Positions 3,726 through 26,514 of a DNA stretch of 64,000 nucleotides are shown in pieces. This DNA comes from Tetramitus jugosus. Taxonomy: Eukaryota > Protista > Heterolobosea. Both the position numbers and the translations under genes were made by a program. The notes under the pieces are model-generated. The model saw only the letters and a list, made by a program, of their open reading frames with translations. It was not told the origin of the DNA and did not search any database. Numbering within the stretch: the first letter of the stretch is position 1; the number at the start of each line of letters is the position of its first letter. Location of the stretch: NCBI GenBank assembly GCA_937625935.1, contig OW569360.1, positions 124,001 to 188,000 on the forward strand. Reading direction: 5' to 3'.

Positions 3726-6700
3726 TCATGATGAATGATTAATCCTGCTCTTGAATCTCTTGGTTCGTGGAGGAGAGAGATAGGCAATCTGGCTATTGGT
3801 TCTTTTTCTTTTTCGTTCATGATTGGAGGAAGTGGTCTCTTGAAATGATGCCCAGGACTGCCACACTAAATTGTTCTTCAAATCTGTTGTGTGGCTGTCT
3901 GATTCTCCACTGCTAGTTGGTTCAGTTGTATTCGACCCTCGCAACTTTTGAGGATGCTTGATCTGGATGTTCTGTCTGATCCAATGCTTGATATGAGAGC
4001 TACATTGTTCACAGAAACTCGATACCACAGACGATTGCAACTGCTTTTCAATATCGAAGAGCAGAAGAACAGGTAGTCCATAGTTGATTGAATATGCCCA
4101 TTGCACTACAATAGAGATAAACGCACTATGCATCAAGAAAGGTTTCTCTAGTAGAAGCATCTTGATTGCAGTAGATATTTGAGGAAGCAGAGTGCTATTC
4201 GCTAACCTAGGGAGTAGAAACAAAGGTGAACATTTGTTTTTGAATACAACCTCGAGCACTATTAGCAGATTATCTTTCATATCTTGTGTGGAGTTGTTGG
4301 GAAACTGTTTTAGAACATTCAAGAACCACATTGATTCCATCACGGTCGAGGAGGGTTGAGTCTTCGAGAACGATGGAATCTGATTTGTATCTACTTTTTC
4401 CTCTTGTTTCACTTTTGTTAAATCTTCAGTGTTTTGACCAATTGACAGACAGTACTCTGAGATGAGGTCAATGAGTTCACTCGGAAGTCTCGGTTCATTC
4501 GTTTGTTTCGATAGATATATTGGCAATATTTTCGTGAGCTCCACAAAGAGAGCACTCAGGAAACGAGAGCAACGATTATCAAAATAGTATGGCAAATACA
4601 AGTTGTTAATGATGTCCCTTATTTGTGTAGCTCTGATATGTGTTGGATTCCTAGTATAGGCTGACAATGTCCAATAAAGCCAGCATCTAAATCCAGGTTT
4701 CGAGAAGAGTGATAAATAGTATTGCCGGCACCTTAAGTTCGGCATTTGTTGGTAGTGCGGGTCATGAGTGAATAAACGCGATTCTGTAGCCGATATCCAT
4801 GCATTCTTTGATTGTTTCTGAGCACTTTTGCTGTGTGTTTCGATGGACGAAAACTCTAGGTTTTGTCCTAACTGTTTAACAACTTTACCTCGGAAATGTT
4901 GCCACCAACCGATGATGTTAGTTACATCTGGGCCACAATATATATCTGACAACCATTCGAACCGATGAAACAGTGACTGGTTGCACCAAAAGCCATCAGA
5001 AAGCGTTGCAAGATCGTGATTCAATGTTCCGACCTGACCAATGATCTTATCTAAACTTGGAGTATATCTTGATATGACATATTGCGCGAGGTGACTCACA
5101 ATGCTTGTTGGATACACTTCATTACACATGACATCATTAAAGATATGTCTCCAAATATTGTTGTGCAATTTCGAGGTTTCACTGTACACCAACACGATTT
5201 CAGTTGGAGCAAACAGAACCCACTTGTGATCTGACATTGGAAGCTCATTTGAAGATCGCTCTATCTCAATACAACTTCTCAATAGATTCGTGTATGCAGT
5301 GATAAGTCCGTCAGAAATGAAAAAGCTTGCATAATTCTTAAATATGCGCATACAGCAGCTTAATAGCGTATGAACATTCCGTTTCATTGCCTGATCGGAA
5401 TCTTGAACTTGTTGGACAAACAATTGCTTCATGATTATTTTAGCAAGTGTTGTTGTGTCAACTAGGTTACCAGAGCACAAAAATTGAAAAATGCGTTGTT
5501 CAGTCACTAGATCGTTAAATCCATTCACATCCAACACTGCAGAAAGCTCTCTGGATGGGGGTTGAAGATGAAATGACTCCATGAACATCTTCTTAAATTC
5601 TAATTGATTCCTAGAAAAGTTCCGATTGCTCGACAATATGTGATGCAAGAGATTGAACAACTGCAGCGCTGGACCAAGTAGCTCTGTATTGTTTCTCCAC
5701 TTTACAAGATAATCCTGTTTCATGGCCAATAGTTGTTCGTAAATATTCACATGATTCTCGTCTATCAGCTTCATTATTGTGTCACATGATGAGTTGGCTC
5801 GGAATGAGTCCAAAATGCTGCACTGGAACTGATTTGTTTCTAGTGAGGTATCTGAAGTGGGTTTTAAAAGATTGGTAGGAATAGATGGGAACTTATCCAG
5901 GGCCTCTCTTCTAATTTCTTCACAATATTTCTGGACAGGTAACTGTATTTCGTCACTGGTTAAAATAACAGACAAGAGAGGGATAATAACTACTTGAATA
6001 TGATACACATTCTCTCGACTGAATCGATGCCGAATACAATCTAGAATAGACACAGCATCATATCGTTTGATAGCAGACAATAAATAGTTGCTCATTGAAT
6101 ATTGGGTCTTGCCAACAAACGATTGATAATGTAATGCTAAGGACCAATTGATAGCCATATGAACTTCTCTCGCTTCTATTATTTTATCGAGTAAATCGGT
6201 CAATGACCTCGTCGTATTCTGATTCGAAACCATCGTATGATAATAGAGGAACAAAAATCGATCAATAATGCTGCGACACGAATCGCCTATACAGTACACG
6301 TATGTTTGCCTATTCTTTCGACATATATCTTTCATCAGAATGATTGCGCACTTGGAAAACAAATCGATCAAACCATTCATTTGACTATTCTGTTGCAATG
6401 TACGAATCACAATCTCCTCAATTGCTAATGTCGCTCCACCGTTCATCTCACTTGAAAAACAGTGAATCATGCTGGAGATGGTTGATTCAAGCACTGAATG
6501 AGTCATTGTTTTTTGACACTGACTCACGAGCAGTACACAGACATGAGAGGAAACAAAGCGCGAAATGACATCACTTAGTTCACGCTCAGATGAACAACAC
6601 ATCTCATAGGCATTCAAGCTCAACGCAACAGCATCCAACAATTGTTGCTGATTATTTTTCAATGTCGTTATCGTCGCTGATTTATCCTTTGGACTGCTAC

Positions 6701-21448: not shown

Positions 21449-21740
21449 TGTCAAACTTGTGTTTTCGTCTTTCTTTTTTTTGTTGTCTTTTGCGTGACTT
21501 GGAAGGTTTGAGCTTTGGCGGGTTTTCACTGATGGAGTTATTCCGCCATCGGTGAAAGTAATATTATTCCGAATGAACGTCAAACTTGAACTCGAGTGTC
21601 TGTTCCACGTCGACTGCAGCGACAAAAACGCACGTGTATACCTTCGGCCTTGATTCAACAACAAGCTCTTTGCGATAGTGTTCTGCACCCACACAAACAA
21701 AGTAAAATCGACTATTTATTGTCAAGAGAAAATAACAACG

Positions 21741-23981
21741 ATGACCCCATTCTCTGTTTTAACTTCCGATCTATCGATAATTCTCCGTCTCACCTCTTTT
21801 CTGAGTGATGACAGTGCAAGTATATGCTCTCTGACTGCCTTGAATCGTTCCTGTTGGGATTTATTGGGAGATCACTCTGCCGGGCAAATCAATCATGAAC
21901 ACGTGTGGAAGGTACTGTTCGAACAAAGGTGGCCTTCCATGTCATGGATACTGACAGCATCAGGTGATGAGGTACTGTCTGATTCAAAGGGCTGGAAGCA
22001 AATGTACGTAGATCGCTCCATGTGCGATCATACATTGCAAAAAGGCAAGCCTCGTCAAATCGTACTCGAGTCCCACACGTGTGCCGTCTCTGCCATGTGC
22101 CAGATTGATATTCGATCGAATAATCTGGGATTTGTGGACACAAAGAGACCTACTATCATTACAGCAGATGAAGAAGGTGGAATGATCCAGTGGGATCCTA
22201 CAACTGGTCTTCAAATGAAGTTTATGGATGTCATTCATCAGACAAAGGTTATTTCGATTCAACCTGTGCCTCAGATTCCAAACAGAGTCGTAAGTTGTGA
22301 ATCTGGAAGAGCAGAGTCGAATGGTGATGGAGCACAAGTCGTATTGTGGGATGCCTTCCTGGGTAATGACAAAATTTATGAAGTTTATGAAAATATTAAT
22401 TGTGTGGGTGGTGTGGCTGGTGAATCAGTAGGACCAGTAGGTGCATTCTTATGGCTGAGTAATCAATGCTTTGTTTGTGCTGCAGGAGCTGATCTATTTG
22501 TCTGGTATAACAATGCAGTTGAAGATTCCAACAACTTCTTCTTGCTCCACCATATACCAAACGCACATACTTACGACATCACAACAATGAAGAAAGTTCA
22601 TGGATTTACTGGTGGTCTAAGTGATCCAACAAATGATGGAGATAATGGACTAGTTATTGTCACTGGATCAATGGATGGATCGTTGAAAACTTGGAATGTT
22701 GATTCTGGAAGTCTGCTGTTTAGTCTAGATGGACATAATGGATCCATCACCCAAGTGGACACATCTGCCACAGGATACATCGTAAGCGCATCAAGTGATA
22801 GTACTGCAAAGGTGTGGGATAAAAGTGGTGATTGTATCTCAACATTAGTAGGCCACACTAAGGGCTTAACTTGTGTGATGGTCGATAAGAACCCAAAGAG
22901 AACGGTGCGCATCGTGACTGGATCTTCTGACCGTACAGTGAGAGTTTGGGACCGTCAAAGAAACAACGAATTTACCTGTACTCATGTACTAAGTGACCAC
23001 TCTGCTCGTATTTCTACTGTCCAGTTCAATGAAGCACTGATTATAACTGGGTCGAGTGATCGAAACATCTATGTTTACGATGCACAACAAGCTGATCCAG
23101 AAAAATTAGGAAGCTTAAAGCTGGTAACAAGTTCTTCGCATCACTTGGGTAATATTTCTTCCATCCTGTTTGATGACTTTGGGCGATTTTATTTTGCAGG
23201 TAGTGCTGATGGTTCAATTACAATTTACAACTGTATGCCAACCCGAAAACATACCGTTCAATCAAGCACGAATAAGAATCAGAAGGATGTTTGGGTATCT
23301 CCCCTGTACGACACTGCCAGCAACACTTACATGGGTCCACCAACACCTACCTGGAGTAGTCTCGTAACAGACAAGTTACCAGATGACTACAATGCAATTG
23401 AGGTTGTGCCAATTCTGACAAATCGATTCAAAGATGTGCTTCTCTTATACAATGTCTTATCCCCTTCCGAGTGTAGCAATCTCATCAAGGAGACTGAAAC
23501 ACTTCAGTACGAGGATTGTCATGGATACCACGTACAATACAGATCAAATAAGAGAGTCATCATTATGGATCACAAAACGTGTGACGTCGTATCAGACAGA
23601 ATAAGAGCTCACGTTCCTCAAACAGTCATAAGACAAGGATATGAATGGAATTTGGAGGGATTGAATGAAGTTTGGCGATTCTGCAGGTACACACCTGGTC
23701 AACACTTTAGTCCTCATATCGATGGGTACTTTGCAAGGAATGAAGATAACCGCTCCTGGTTCACTTTCATGATCTACCTGAATGGTGGTTTCACTGAGGG
23801 AACAACCAGATTCCTGAAGGACAGACAATCACTCGAAGTATTAGAAAAGGTTGTTCCACAAGCTGGCATGACATTGGTGTTTCCTCATGAGCTGTTGCAT
23901 GATGGTGAGCCACTCGGCTCAGAATCAAAGTATATCATGAGAAGTGATGTGATGTACAAGCGAGGCAAACGTGTAAACTAA
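21741..23981 (+). CDS. F-box-like / WD40 / 2OG-Fe(II) oxygenase (prolyl-4-hydroxylase-like) fusion protein
   Basis: LTSDLSIILRLTSFLS...LTALNRSCW...VWKVLFEQRWP (F-box-like). WD40 repeats (IVTGSMDGSLKTWN, IVSASSDSTAKVWD, IVTGSSDRTVRVWD). C-terminal RFCRYTPGQHFSPHID...FMIYLN...LLHDG...KYIMRSDVMY. Confidence 0.88.
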   Translation: MTPFSVLTSDLSIILRLTSFLSDDSASICSLTALNRSCWDLLGDHSAGQINHEHVWKVLFEQRWPSMSWILTASGDEVLSDSKGWKQMYVDRSMCDHTLQKGKPRQIVLESHTCAVSAMCQIDIRSNNLGFVDTKRPTIITADEEGGMIQWDPTTGLQMKFMDVIHQTKVISIQPVPQIPNRVVSCESGRAESNGDGAQVVLWDAFLGNDKIYEVYENINCVGGVAGESVGPVGAFLWLSNQCFVCAAGADLFVWYNNAVEDSNNFFLLHHIPNAHTYDITTMKKVHGFTGGLSDPTNDGDNGLVIVTGSMDGSLKTWNVDSGSLLFSLDGHNGSITQVDTSATGYIVSASSDSTAKVWDKSGDCISTLVGHTKGLTCVMVDKNPKRTVRIVTGSSDRTVRVWDRQRNNEFTCTHVLSDHSARISTVQFNEALIITGSSDRNIYVYDAQQADPEKLGSLKLVTSSSHHLGNISSILFDDFGRFYFAGSADGSITIYNCMPTRKHTVQSSTNKNQKDVWVSPLYDTASNTYMGPPTPTWSSLVTDKLPDDYNAIEVVPILTNRFKDVLLLYNVLSPSECSNLIKETETLQYEDCHGYHVQYRSNKRVIIMDHKTCDVVSDRIRAHVPQTVIRQGYEWNLEGLNEVWRFCRYTPGQHFSPHIDGYFARNEDNRSWFTFMIYLNGGFTEGTTRFLKDRQSLEVLEKVVPQAGMTLVFPHELLHDGEPLGSESKYIMRSDVMYKRGKRVN

Positions 23982-24026
23982 ACTAAATAAAACACATAAG
24001 TTTCATGGTAGTTTTCTGTTAAGACC

Positions 24027-26514
24027 TTATTCTTTTATTGGCGACAAGTTGAGTAAAGAAGGGGGTTCTGTCTGTTCCGCGTCCATTTCTAGTAGTTGTC
24101 CATCCTGTTGAATCATATATTGGTTGCTCTTTGGAGTCAATTCAATTGTTGGTTGAGTAGGTGGTCGATCTATTGGTTGCTTCTCGGTCGTGCCATCTGG
24201 ATAGCAAGTTGTTTTCTCTTTCGTTGCTGGGTCAAATATCGCAAAGCGATTCTTAGGTTTCTCAACAACTGGTGCTCCATCGAAAAATTCCTTCTCGAAC
24301 AGTTGTAACTCTGTCCGGAAGGTTGGATTGGGGCTCACCTGCGGCCGACGTTCACCTAGATACCGGAATGCTGTCTTAACTCTCAATTGCTTGTATTGCA
24401 TAATAAATGCCGTCATGATCGTTGCTGATCTACTGACACCTGCCATGCAGTGAACAATACACCCACCTGCCTCAATACCCTCCTTAATAAACTCAGCAGT
24501 TTCGTAAAAGTGAGCTTTCAAGGACGCTGTCCGCACATCATCAGTATAGATGACCATATATTTAAAATCGTCAGTGTACTTTGGCGGAATATCGTTTGCT
24601 ATCGTCAATACATGTGTAACGCCGTATGCTTTGAGTAAATGCTTGTTCGTTGAAGCATTGGCCGAACCAATAAAAAGCCCCTTGCCTATTTGTGATGCCA
24701 CTTCAAATTGATTTGTGAATGAAACATTGTTGGTCGTTATCCATTGTTGAACCTCGTCCGAGATTTCTAAATGTTGATGGTTGAAACTCACGCATAGTGA
24801 TGTCAATTTGGTTAGTTTCGTGATCGAGTTCGGTATGGTCGTGAGTCCATTGTTGTCCAAGTTGAGTTGAATCAAGCTGTCCATTTGTTCAATCCGGGAG
24901 TCCAACTCCTCAATCAAGTTATGCTTCAATCGAGCCTGTGTCAAGCTCTTCAACATATAAAACGATTCGGGGAGCTCTGGAATCCGATTCATTGTGAAAT
25001 CGAGCACAGATAATGTGTTTTGAATAAATGGGTTTTCGCTGATGCCTGTGGGGAACGACCGAATCAGATTGTTAGAAGCTTTGACTTCACGTAGCTCTTG
25101 CATCAATGACCAATCGAACATTTGATCAATCATGTTTGAAGAAACATTTAACGTTTGCAGCCTTGACAGATATTGCATTGAACGAGGCAAGTATTCAATT
25201 TGATTGTTTGCGAGGTTCAAGGATTGCAAGTGAGAGAACGAACCAATGCCCTCATCGATCTCCGTGATCGAATTGTCACTCAAGTCCAAAATCTCCAAAA
25301 ACGTGAGCTGCGTAATGTGTGCTGGTAGGTGGTTGATGCGATTTCCGTTCAATCTCAACTCTTGCAAGTACCTGAGCGATTTGATCTCTGTGGGCAGTCC
25401 CAATATATTGTTTTTAGACAAGTGAAGAATTCTGAGTTCTTCCAGTGAACAAAACTGCGACCATGCAGTGATGTTACAATCGTTGGCGTACAGTTCTTCC
25501 AACTGATTCAACATTCTCAAATCATGCATGGGCAGCTTTGAAATCCTGTTCTCTGAAATGTTGAGCACTTTGAGTCGTGTCAGCTCACACACTGCTCTTG
25601 GAAACTCTCTCAATCCGCACTTGTCGATATTCAAGTTGGTCAATGTGTCCTTTAGCCGAATAATCGACTCTGGCACCTCTTCAATATTGTTCTTGGACAA
25701 TCTGAGAGATTGCAACTGGGAGAATTCGGCCAACTTTGCAGGAAACGTATGAAACTGATTGAATCCGAGATCAAGCACCTTCAAGCTCTGTTGAATAGGC
25801 ACGATGGGTGATCCACCTGATCCGAATAAGCTGGACAATAGGCCACCAGAATTCGAAAAGGAAATCTTATTGATCTGATTGAAAGACAAGTCTAGTACCT
25901 CTAAATTGGCAAACTTGTTGACTGATTGGGGCCATGTTGACAAGTCATTCAATTGCAAGTGCAATTGTTGCAATGAACCACTCAACATATCCAAATTCCT
26001 TGGCAGTACTCTGAGTTGACTCCGATTGAGCTTCAAAACTCGCAAAGAGTACAGTTGTGAGATGGTTTCTGGCAGTTCCCGAACATCATTCCCCGTGAGA
26101 TCCAACTCTGTTAATTGAACCAATTTACATAGCTAAAAGAATTCCATATCGTGGTGTGTGTTGTTTTTGTCGTGTTAGCTTTTCAAGTATTTTACAAAAC
26201 GCAGGCAAAAAACACAGACTCAGAAAGAACCAAAAAATAAAGTTCAGAGCTTTCAACAACAAAATGAATCTCTCATCATCATCACACAAAATCACACATA
26301 CACGAATTAAATCAGCTTCCGTAGCTTTGAGTTGCGTCTTGTTTGCAGATTTATAGAGAGCTAAATCCAATATTTGAACAGGTATTTTTTGTGATTGTAA
26401 GAATTCAATTTGTTCAATTTTGGTTCGCGCTGGCAATTGTTGTTGCTGTTGTTCATTGCTATAGCTGCTTCCACTCTGATTATTGCTGTTATTATTATTG
26501 TTATTATTGATCAT
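24027..26514 (-). CDS. Leucine-rich-repeat dual-specificity phosphatase (2 exons: 26514-26302, 26132-24027)
   Basis: About 18 LxxLxLxxN repeats, then GLFIGS, DD loop and VHCMAGVSRS catalytic motif. Intron 26133-26301 (GTATGT...TTTTAG) keeps the frame. Confidence 0.93.

What the first reader, a model, noticed from the sequence alone, without database searches (positions are those of the whole stretch)
21741..23981. F-box-like/WD40 substrate receptor fused to an intact 2OG-Fe(II) prolyl-hydroxylase-type domain
Seen: one ORF containing an F-box-like N-terminus, a WD40 propeller and an oxygenase domain with the complete HxD (HID)...H (LHDG) iron triad and a K/R 2OG-binding motif (KYIMRSD). Established: F-box/WD40 proteins are SCF receptors, and in Dictyostelium and Toxoplasma Skp1 is prolyl-hydroxylated for O2 sensing by a separate enzyme. 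Inference: this could be a single-chain O2-dependent ubiquitin ligase module that hydroxylates Skp1 or its own substrate, a possible protist analogue of PHD/VHL logic.
Basis: partly seen in the sequence, partly recalled or inferred. Interest (0 to 1): 0.8.

Follow-up and report, generated by a model that had tools for sequence, protein, structure and literature searches.

The report
F-box/WD40 protein with built-in prolyl-hydroxylase-type domain
A soil amoeba gene encodes one protein that joins a ubiquitin-ligase docking motif, a protein-binding propeller and an intact oxygen-using hydroxylase; this layout is conserved in related amoebae and hints at oxygen-dependent protein turnover, but its target is unknown and is probably not Skp1.

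Summary
Window 21741-23981 (+) is a single intronless 746-aa ORF. It is covered end to end by one metatranscriptome contig. It has three parts:
- a divergent F-box-like N-terminus;
- an 8-bladed WD40 propeller laid out like Fbw7/Cdc4;
- a C-terminal 2OG/Fe(II) oxygenase with an invariant HxD...H triad and a 2OG-binding Lys.

By profile and fold the oxygenase is closest to P4H-type prolyl 4-hydroxylases, not to the PhyA/PHD clade.

The window protein's own N-terminus fails Pfam's F-box models. Orthologues pass or nearly pass, a family profile hits FBXW proteins, and the model superposes on Fbw7/Cdc4 from residue 1.

Orthologues occur in Naegleria gruberi, N. lovaniensis, Willaertia magna and Acrasis kona. 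All are unstudied.

Skp1 as the substrate is unlikely. The genome encodes a separate PhyA-like hydroxylase fused to the Gnt1 GlcNAc-transferase.

The same genome holds two more oxygenase/F-box fusions. First readers of this scan noted both on other contigs, and I confirmed them here. Many bacteria independently fuse this oxygenase subfamily to WD40.

Best reading: a Skp1-docked hydroxylase that acts on a WD40-bound protein. This is a new variant of the known F-box-plus-dioxygenase kind. Substrate and activity are untested.

The parts
21753..21935 (+). F-box-like region (residues 5-65); relative to orthologues it carries an extra stretch of about 10 residues around GDHSAGQINHEH, before the conserved Trp
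   Evidence: The window protein itself has no Pfam hit. It aligns with orthologues whose N-termini score: P0121 F-box-like PF12937 at 27.0 bits (cut-off 24.3), P0122 at 23.3 bits, and P0136 F-box PF00646 at 18.1 bits. The family profile hits FBXW12/19/21/24, FBXW7 and FBXO3 at their F-boxes, E about 1e-3. The region is modelled as helices with pLDDT 42-69.
21936..22052 (+). Helical linker between the F-box and the propeller (residues 66-104), with the conserved GW..Y/F motif
   Evidence: Alignment A2. Helices H65-73, H77-82 and H85-100 in the model. The model superposes on Fbw7 and Cdc4 from residue 1.
22053..23231 (+). WD40 beta-propeller (residues 105-497); 32 strands, i.e. 8 blades
   Evidence: Pfam WD40 E 4e-27. 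PDB phmmer gives FBXW7 at E 5e-39. The AF2 model has 32 strands. VIA-align: Fbw7 7t1y_B Z 36.4 with 395 residues aligned (model 1-502 to chain 280-706); Cdc4 3v7d_B Z 35.4 with 409 aligned. Propeller-only chains align about 315-335 residues.
23232..23399 (+). Interdomain tether (residues 498-553): a low-confidence stretch at 505-516 followed by the conserved motif LYDxASxTYxGPPxxT (residues 522-537, nt 23304-23351)
   Evidence: pLDDT is below 50 for residues 505-516. Y523, D524 and Y530 are invariant and P534 nearly so across orthologues.
23400..23978 (+). P4H-type 2OG/Fe(II) oxygenase domain (residues 554-746): iron ligands H659, D661 and H720; 2OG-binding K730; R734
   Evidence: Pfam PF13640. 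Catalytic residues are invariant in 40 relatives. Profile against PDB: B. anthracis P4H E 6.5e-15, Chlamydomonas P4H E 3e-9, PBCV-1 vCPH E 4e-8. AF2 pLDDT 95.9. Foldseek and VIA-align top hits are CrP4H (Z 18.2) and vCPH (Z 17.6).
21649..23992 (+). Extent of RNA-library contigs over the gene (apparent transcript unit, no intron)
   Evidence: Contigs from four soil metatranscriptomes. X2 covers 21783-23992 in one piece, X3 covers 22653-23848, and X4 covers 21656-23369 plus 23379-23992. There are no joints, and depth is zero at 21500-21590 and 23993-24057.

Best explanation
The gene encodes a lineage-specific FBXW-type F-box protein of heterolobosean amoebae. Its Fbw7/Cdc4-like 8-bladed WD40 propeller is followed, through a flexible tether, by a catalytically intact P4H-type 2-oxoglutarate/Fe(II) oxygenase.

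Shown:
- the domain order;
- the conserved catalytic residues;
- conservation of the fusion across genera;
- a single transcript.

Inferred, step by step:
1. The divergent F-box docks the protein on Skp1, and hence probably on a cullin-1 ligase.
2. The propeller binds a protein target.
3. The tethered oxygenase uses O2 and 2-oxoglutarate to hydroxylate a residue of that target or of a neighbour in the complex. Proline is the most likely residue.
4. Hydroxylation and SCF-dependent ubiquitination then act on the same target, or the SCF link controls the enzyme's own level.

Skp1 itself is probably not the substrate.
For: Architecture and transcript.

Orthologues with the same order: P0121, P0122, P0123, P0133; W. 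magna P0136; N. gruberi P0142; N. lovaniensis P0138. A. kona has the gene split by a frameshift.

F-box: orthologue Pfam hits, profile hits to FBXW proteins, and superposition on the full Fbw7 and Cdc4 chains from model residue 1.

Oxygenase: intact and P4H-like.

SCF machinery in the genome: Skp1, at least 8 cullins and at least 140 F-box-like matches.

Coupling of the oxygenase to WD40:
- A separate clade of bacterial proteins fuses this subfamily N-terminally to WD40. All 7 sampled proteins did so.
- Two of them sit in bacterial gene contexts.
- 46 of the 80 best genome loci carry matches running on into the WD40 part.
- The two clades separate on the tree, with SH-aLRT 88 and 94.

Coupling of oxygenases to F-boxes: the same genome has a P4H-like/F-box/actin-like gene and a 2OG-FeII_Oxy/F-box/Rho gene.

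Precedent: Dictyostelium JcdI is an F-box dioxygenase found in the Skp1 interactome (PMC9485057).
Against: - The window protein's own N-terminus scores with no Pfam F-box model. It lacks the usual Leu-Pro and is modelled with low confidence, pLDDT 42-69. Skp1 binding is therefore unproven.
- No member of this oxygenase subfamily has a known substrate.
- Structural Z-scores fall off gently, from 18.2 to about 15, across protein hydroxylases and small-molecule enzymes such as PiuC and PolD. The fold alone therefore does not fix a protein substrate.
- No information on interdomain geometry was available.
- For JcdI, the F-box was dispensable for the O2-related phenotype (PMC9485057), so an F-box need not mean that a substrate is ubiquitinated.
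Confidence: 0.5

Rival explanations
1. It is a targeted hydroxylase, not a ubiquitin-ligase receptor. The WD40 domain brings the oxygenase to its protein substrate. The F-box serves only to park, stabilise or down-regulate the enzyme through Skp1, as proposed for Dictyostelium JcdI. The substrate is not ubiquitinated.
For: Bacteria have no SCF yet carry the same oxygenase subfamily fused to WD40. The oxygenase-WD40 pair therefore works without ubiquitination. JcdI's O2-related effect needed its dioxygenase activity but not its F-box, and recombinant JcdI needed Skp1 for solubility (PMC9485057).
Against: The F-box, helical linker and 8-blade propeller are laid out as in the bona fide receptors Fbw7 and Cdc4. 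The genome has full SCF machinery.
Confidence: 0.25
2. One reading: the tethered oxygenase hydroxylates Skp1 at the Pro of the DFTPEEE motif. The protein would then be a self-contained O2 sensor for its own SCF complex.
For: The genome's Skp1 keeps the target proline, in ...ENDFTPEEE.... The F-box would bring the oxygenase close to Skp1.
Against: - A dedicated PhyA-like domain exists in the genome. Its best PDB hit is DdPhyA 6t8m (E 1e-7), followed by EGLN1/2. It lies in one 850-aa ORF with the Gnt1-type GlcNAc-transferase PF11397.
- The window's oxygenase is P4H-branch: profile E 0.023 to DdPhyA against 6.5e-15 to BaP4H.
- PhyA and the glycosyltransferases are inhibited on Skp1 in F-box-protein complexes (PMC12101541).
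- The subfamily has stand-alone and bacterial members that have no Skp1.
Confidence: 0.06
3. The oxygenase acts on a small molecule or nucleic acid, or serves only as a 2OG/O2/iron-binding sensor. The N-terminus is not a working F-box, so the protein has no link to ubiquitination.
For: The window protein's N-terminus fails Pfam. PiuC, PolD and AlkB-type enzymes lie within about 2-3 Z units of the best structural matches. In other eukaryotes the subfamily is fused to unrelated domains: rhodanese in Didymoeca and NADAR in Ploeotia.
Against: Orthologues pass or approach F-box thresholds at the same position. The profile hits are all F-box proteins. The strongest sequence-profile matches are all protein prolyl 4-hydroxylases. 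Two further oxygenase/F-box fusions in the genome have clear F-boxes.
Confidence: 0.15

Closest known systems
Fbw7 / Cdc4 (FBXW7-type SCF substrate receptors)
   Same: N-terminal F-box, helical linker and 8-bladed WD40 propeller. The model superposes over the whole Fbw7 and Cdc4 chains (Z 36.4 and 35.4, with 395 and 409 residues aligned). By sequence FBXW7 is among the best natural PDB matches, and the best F-box protein (E 5e-39).
   Different: A C-terminal oxygenase domain is added, the F-box is much more divergent, and the first four blades are weakly WD-like. I did not test whether the phosphodegron-binding arginines are kept.
F-box + JmjC dioxygenases: Dictyostelium JcdI/FBXO13 and its protist relatives (PMC9485057, PMC11570480); KDM2A/B (my own knowledge)
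   Same: One chain carries both an F-box and a 2OG/Fe(II) dioxygenase. JcdI sits in the Skp1 interactome and has a physiological O2 dependence.
   Different: The oxygenase here is P4H-type (PF13640), not JmjC. It lies C-terminal to a WD40 receptor domain, so receptor and enzyme are combined.
PHD2/EGLN plus VHL (animal HIF pathway)
   Same: The logic proposed is the same: O2-dependent prolyl hydroxylation coupled to a cullin-RING ligase receptor.
   Different: In animals the hydroxylase and the receptor are separate proteins, the receptor is a CUL2 BC-box protein, and the hydroxylase belongs to the PHD clade. Here any coupling is only inferred.
PhyA (Skp1 prolyl 4-hydroxylase) and Gnt1
   Same: A cytoplasmic 2OG prolyl hydroxylase that acts within the SCF system of protists.
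   Different: A different clade. The genome has its own PhyA-like enzyme fused to Gnt1.
Stand-alone P4Hs: B. anthracis P4H, Chlamydomonas CrP4H-1, PBCV-1 vCPH, P. putida PPHD
   Same: The same fold, iron triad and Lys for 2OG. These are the best profile and structure matches.
   Different: Only about 20-25% identity. The window's subfamily has its own invariant motifs (YRSNxR, RFCRY). No member has been characterised.

Membership tests
F-box protein (FBXW class) | An N-terminal motif of about 45 residues that scores with F-box models (PF00646 / PF12937) | tested here: inconclusive
   The window protein has no hit at E up to 10. Orthologues aligned at the same position score: P0121 27.0 bits (cut-off 24.3), P0122 23.3, P0136 18.1 (cut-off 20.5) and P0133 14.7. 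The family profile hits FBXW12/19/21/24, FBXW7 and FBXO3 at E 8e-4 to 1.5e-2.
F-box protein (FBXW class) | F-box helices plus a helical linker packed before a WD40 propeller, as in Fbw7/Cdc4 | tested here: met
   VIA-align maps model residues 1-502 to Fbw7 280-706 (395 aligned) and 1-499 to Cdc4 270-744 (409 aligned). Propeller-only chains align about 315-335 residues. Caveat: the N-terminal pLDDT is 42-69.
F-box protein (FBXW class) | Binds Skp1 and assembles with cullin-1/Rbx1 | not testable with these tools
   Only the presence of Skp1 and cullins in the genome was shown.
P4H-type 2OG/Fe(II) oxygenase (PF13640 / P4Hc) | Double-stranded beta-helix fold with an HxD...H iron triad | tested here: met
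   PF13640 scores 38-40 bits against a cut-off of 27. AF2 pLDDT is 95.9. Z is 18.2 to CrP4H. H659, D661 and H720 are invariant in 40 relatives.
P4H-type 2OG/Fe(II) oxygenase (PF13640 / P4Hc) | A basic residue about 10 positions after the distal His that binds the 2OG C5 carboxylate (Lys in P4Hs) | tested here: met
   K730 lies at H720+10, is invariant, and aligns with the Lys of the B. anthracis P4H 'GEKW'. Its role is assigned from my knowledge of P4Hs.
P4H-type 2OG/Fe(II) oxygenase (PF13640 / P4Hc) | Hydroxylates peptidyl proline | not testable with these tools
   No characterised member lies closer than about 25% identity.
PhyA (Skp1 prolyl hydroxylase) | Belongs to the PhyA/PHD2 clade | tested here: not met
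   The subfamily profile gives E 0.023 to DdPhyA 6t8m against 6.5e-15 to BaP4H. A distinct PhyA-like gene exists elsewhere in the genome.
F-box + JmjC dioxygenase (JcdI / KDM2) | JmjC-type catalytic domain | tested here: not met
   No JmjC model is among the matches listed for the whole protein or its C-terminal part; the only oxygenase family there is PF13640.

The most novel reading that the evidence does not exclude
A single-chain equivalent of the PHD-plus-VHL logic. The SCF receptor itself hydroxylates the protein held on its WD40 propeller, and this O2- and 2-oxoglutarate-dependent mark decides whether the same complex ubiquitinates it. It would be one of several oxygenase/F-box fusions forming an oxygen- or metabolite-gated branch of the ubiquitin system in heterolobosean amoebae.
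Probability: 0.2. Interest if true: 0.85.

Novelty: new variant of a known kind. Interest (0 to 1): 0.6.

Why it matters
Coupling of oxygen-dependent hydroxylation to cullin-RING ubiquitination is known in two forms. One is two separate proteins (PHD and VHL). The other is modification of Skp1 by PhyA.

Here a receptor-type F-box/WD40 protein carries its own P4H-type hydroxylase. The fusion is conserved across at least four heterolobosean genera. The same genome holds two further oxygenase/F-box fusions.

If the enzyme acts on the WD40-bound target, this would be a compact model for how hydroxylation can gate degradation, and it could be purified as one protein. It would also give a first functional handle on a large uncharacterised P4H-like subfamily: more than 5,000 representatives, including a widespread bacterial oxygenase-WD40 family.

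The orthologues include one in Naegleria gruberi, which is grown in laboratories (my own knowledge), so the idea can be tested directly.

Tried and rejected
1. A whole-protein word search was swamped by bacterial WD40 kinases and found only a same-species fragment. Orthologues came from searching the oxygenase region alone.
2. A Pfam scan of the window protein's N-terminus found no F-box.
3. hhalign of the N-terminal alignment against a single F-box/WD40 protein (P0095) aligned only a WD repeat, at probability 12%, and was uninformative.
It worked with the bacterial fusion alignment.
5. I looked for a paralogue of the F-box/WD40 part lacking the oxygenase. There is none in the genome, only generic WD40 similarity.
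6. Literature searches for this architecture found no description of it.
7. Skp1 as substrate was considered and largely rejected.
8. A common origin for the bacterial oxygenase-WD40 and the amoebal F-box-WD40-oxygenase fusions was considered. On the tree the two form separate clades, with opposite domain order. I therefore treat them as independent fusions, with only moderate support (SH-aLRT 88 and 94, quick search).
9. Not tested: the phosphodegron arginines of Fbw7/Cdc4, and the interdomain geometry of the full-length model, because no coordinates or PAE were available.
Full report
**What is in the sequence**

Window 21678-23981 (+) is one open frame. The first ATG is at 21741 and gives a 746-aa protein ending at the stop 23979-23981. 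Neighbouring genes are also long uninterrupted ORFs, so the genome is intron-poor. The window lies on contig 17 of a 26.35-Mb, 56-contig assembly.

Pfam finds WD40 repeats (E 4e-27). It also finds a C-terminal 2OG-FeII_Oxy_3 domain at residues 647-733 (E 3e-9; 40.3 bits and E 6.6e-10 when the domain is scanned alone; cut-off 27).

**One transcript**

Contigs from four independent soil metatranscriptomes were laid on 21500-24200.
- One contig of 2,247 nt covers 21783-23992 without a joint.
- Others bridge the WD40/oxygenase junction (22653-23848; 23060-23816).
- Depth is zero at 21500-21590 and at 23993-24057, which is the gap before the convergent downstream gene.
- Three runs have contigs ending at exactly 23992.

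Contigs from RNA libraries can hold DNA, so this is not formal proof. Boundaries that coincide with the gene ends in several runs nevertheless argue for a single intronless mRNA spanning all three parts.

**The oxygenase domain**

A full HMMER scan of 1.84 billion representatives with residues 534-746 found 5,041 relatives at E <= 1e-3 and 2,319 at E <= 1e-10.

In a 40-sequence alignment the iron ligands H659, D661 and H720 are invariant. So are K730 at H+10, R734, and subfamily-specific residues in the YRSNxR and RFCRY motifs.

The profile's best solved relatives are protein prolyl 4-hydroxylases:

| Solved structure | E-value |
|---|---|
| B. anthracis P4H | 6.5e-15 |
| Chlamydomonas P4H | 3e-9 |
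| PBCV-1 vCPH | 4e-8 |
| P4H-TM | 8e-5 |
| P. putida PPHD | 1.5e-3 |
| Dictyostelium PhyA (6t8m; identity confirmed in PMC7864055) | 0.023 |

The AlphaFold model of the domain is confident (pLDDT 95.9). Its best structural matches are again CrP4H (Z 18.2), vCPH (17.6) and PPHD (16.7). However, Z declines slowly to about 15 across PHD2, OGFOD1, LH3, PiuC, PolD and AlkB.

So 'intact, P4H-type' is well supported. 'Hydroxylates proline in a protein' is the most likely reading but remains an inference.

**The F-box**

The window protein's residues 1-150 hit no Pfam model. Four lines of indirect evidence support an F-box.

1. Orthologue N-termini aligned to it score at the same place. P0121 scores F-box-like at 27.0 bits (cut-off 24.3, E 3.8e-6), P0122 at 23.3, W. 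magna P0136 scores F-box at 18.1, and P0133 at 14.7.
2. An HMM of the aligned N-termini searched against PDB sequences returns, apart from WD-repeat hits, mainly F-box proteins matched at their F-boxes. These are FBXW12/19/21/24, FBXW7 and FBXO3, at E 8e-4 to 1.5e-2.
3. The segment after the motif has the FBXW layout: a conserved Trp, a GW..Y helix, then 'LExH...V' of the first blade.
4. In the full-length model (pLDDT 79) residues 4-100 are helical and residues 105-497 form 32 strands, i.e. eight blades.
   - Among solved chains, the longest alignments are to the complete Fbw7 and Cdc4 chains, starting at model residue 1 (Z 36.4 with 395 aligned; Z 35.4 with 409 aligned).
   - Propeller-only chains align about 315-335 residues.

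The N-terminal pLDDT is only 42-69. The window protein also has about 10 extra residues before the conserved Trp, which may explain the Pfam failure. Work on Dictyostelium F-box proteins likewise had to allow insertions between the helices (PMC9485057). I put functional Skp1 binding at about 0.7.

**Distribution**

The same three-part order is found in:
- N. gruberi XP_002681461.1 (725 aa; the gene model starts inside the F-box);
- N. lovaniensis XP_044545732.1 (582 aa);
- W. magna KAL9653265.1 (776 aa);
- several metagenomic and EukProt proteins.

In Acrasis kona the gene is annotated as two adjacent genes, a 395-aa F-box/WD40 gene and the 277-aa 'PKHD-type hydroxylase' KAL0481886.1. The conserved WD repeat continues in another frame across an A-rich run at about L029:3860-3880. 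This is therefore a frameshift in the assembly or the gene, not two genes.

The window genome has no paralogue of the F-box/WD40 part. It has seven further members of the oxygenase subfamily, mostly stand-alone.

None of these proteins appears in the literature I could search.

**Evidence on mechanism**

(a) Skp1 as substrate is unlikely.
- The genome's Skp1 (168 aa) keeps the DFTPEEE proline.
- The genome also has an 850-aa ORF with two halves. The N-terminal half is PhyA/EGLN-like (best PDB hit DdPhyA, E 1e-7). The C-terminal half is the Gnt1-type GlcNAc-transferase PF11397 (E 3e-37). That ORF is the obvious Skp1 hydroxylase.
- PhyA and the glycosyltransferases are reported to be inhibited on Skp1 already bound to F-box proteins (PMC12101541).

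(b) This oxygenase subfamily is repeatedly joined to WD40.
- About a quarter of the 150 best representatives are 400-530-aa proteins with the oxygenase at the N-terminus.
- All seven sampled have a C-terminal WD40 propeller.
- Two lie in plainly bacterial gene neighbourhoods.
- In one genome per bacterial species, 46 of the 80 best loci carry matches that run on from the oxygenase into the WD40 part. They include Myxococcota, Hymenobacter, Tenacibaculum, Achromobacter, Undibacterium and Cellulomonas.
- On a quick ML tree the bacterial fusions (SH-aLRT 94) and the amoebal fusions (SH-aLRT 88, including Acrasis) are separate clades with opposite domain order. The pairing therefore arose at least twice. 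This suggests the propeller is the oxygenase's targeting module.

(c) Oxygenases are repeatedly joined to F-boxes in this genome. I followed two first-reader notes of this scan and confirmed both by Pfam.
- An 816-aa protein with the same P4H-like subfamily (E 7e-14), then an F-box (22.9 bits, cut-off 20.5), then an actin-like domain (E 2e-21).
- A 592-aa protein with a PF03171 2OG oxygenase, then F-box-like (43 bits), then a Rho/Ras GTPase ending in CIVQ.

Together with the known F-box/JmjC protein JcdI, which sits in the Skp1 interactome (PMC9485057), this argues that the F-box/oxygenase link is functional rather than accidental.

**Conclusion**

The best-supported reading is a Skp1-docked, WD40-targeted protein hydroxylase. 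Whether its target is then ubiquitinated by the same SCF complex, or the F-box merely regulates the enzyme as proposed for JcdI, cannot be decided here.

It is a new variant of the known 'F-box protein with a dioxygenase domain' kind. It is also a first functional clue for a large uncharacterised P4H-like subfamily.

Noticed in passing
G000:C2:426503-429055 (L028:358-2910, +): An 850-aa ORF fuses a PhyA/EGLN-type prolyl hydroxylase (PF13640 at residues 196-330; best PDB hit DdPhyA 6t8m) to a Gnt1-type hydroxyproline GlcNAc-transferase (PF11397 at residues 382-756). The first two enzymes of the Skp1 modification pathway are thus in one chain. I did not establish whether such a fusion is described in the literature.
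   Followed up: partly
G000:C38:137006-139453 (L111:507-2954, -): An 816-aa protein: P4H-like oxygenase of the same subfamily (residues 166-265), an F-box (residues 354-393, above the cut-off) and an actin-like domain (from residue 449). This is a second oxygenase/F-box fusion, with a different third domain.
   Followed up: partly
G000:C12:501963-503741 (L123:964-2742, +): A 592-aa protein: PF03171 2OG oxygenase, then a strong F-box (43 bits), then a Rho/Ras GTPase ending in a CAAX-like CIVQ.
   Followed up: partly
G000, several contigs (e.g. C23:478521-479504, C27:475078-476052, C8:510034-511146, C30:237660-238649, C3:402716-403621, C9:384563-385459): F-box-like and Ras-family matches fall in the same open frames at many loci. 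This suggests a sizeable family of F-box/small-GTPase fusion proteins.
   Followed up: no
L031-L076 (bacterial genomes); L002, L004: A widespread bacterial family fuses the P4H-like oxygenase (N-terminal) to a WD40 propeller. It occurs in Myxococcota, Bacteroidota (Hymenobacter, Tenacibaculum), Betaproteobacteria (Achromobacter, Undibacterium, Janthinobacterium), Cellulomonas, Sericytochromatia and others. Function is unknown. TetR-family genes lie nearby in the two contexts I viewed.
   Followed up: partly
L029:2722-4834 (Acrasis kona JAOPGA020000797.1): The orthologue is annotated as two genes, a 395-aa F-box/WD40 gene and the 277-aa KAL0481886.1. The reading frame shifts within an A-rich run at about 3860-3880, while the WD repeat continues in the other frame.
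   Followed up: yes
P0245 (Didymoeca costata), P0271 (Ploeotia vitrea): In other eukaryotes the same oxygenase subfamily sits at the C-terminus behind a rhodanese domain or a NADAR domain.
   Followed up: no
window 23992-24057: RNA-library contigs from three runs end at 23992. They continue with the same non-genomic letters, beginning ACTTAGAACTTTG, 13 to 40 of them by run. This probably reflects 3'-UTR differences between the sequenced strain and its soil relatives. No poly(A) tail was seen.
   Followed up: no
G000:C13:307033-308919 (L113:2534-4420, -) and G000:C3:174768-176621 (L112:1269-3122, +): L113 encodes a 629-aa protein with a JmjC_2 match followed by a 2OG-FeII_Oxy_3/4 domain. L112 encodes an OGFOD1/Ofd1/Tpa1-type protein (2OG-FeII_Oxy_4 plus Ofd1_CTDD).
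   Followed up: no
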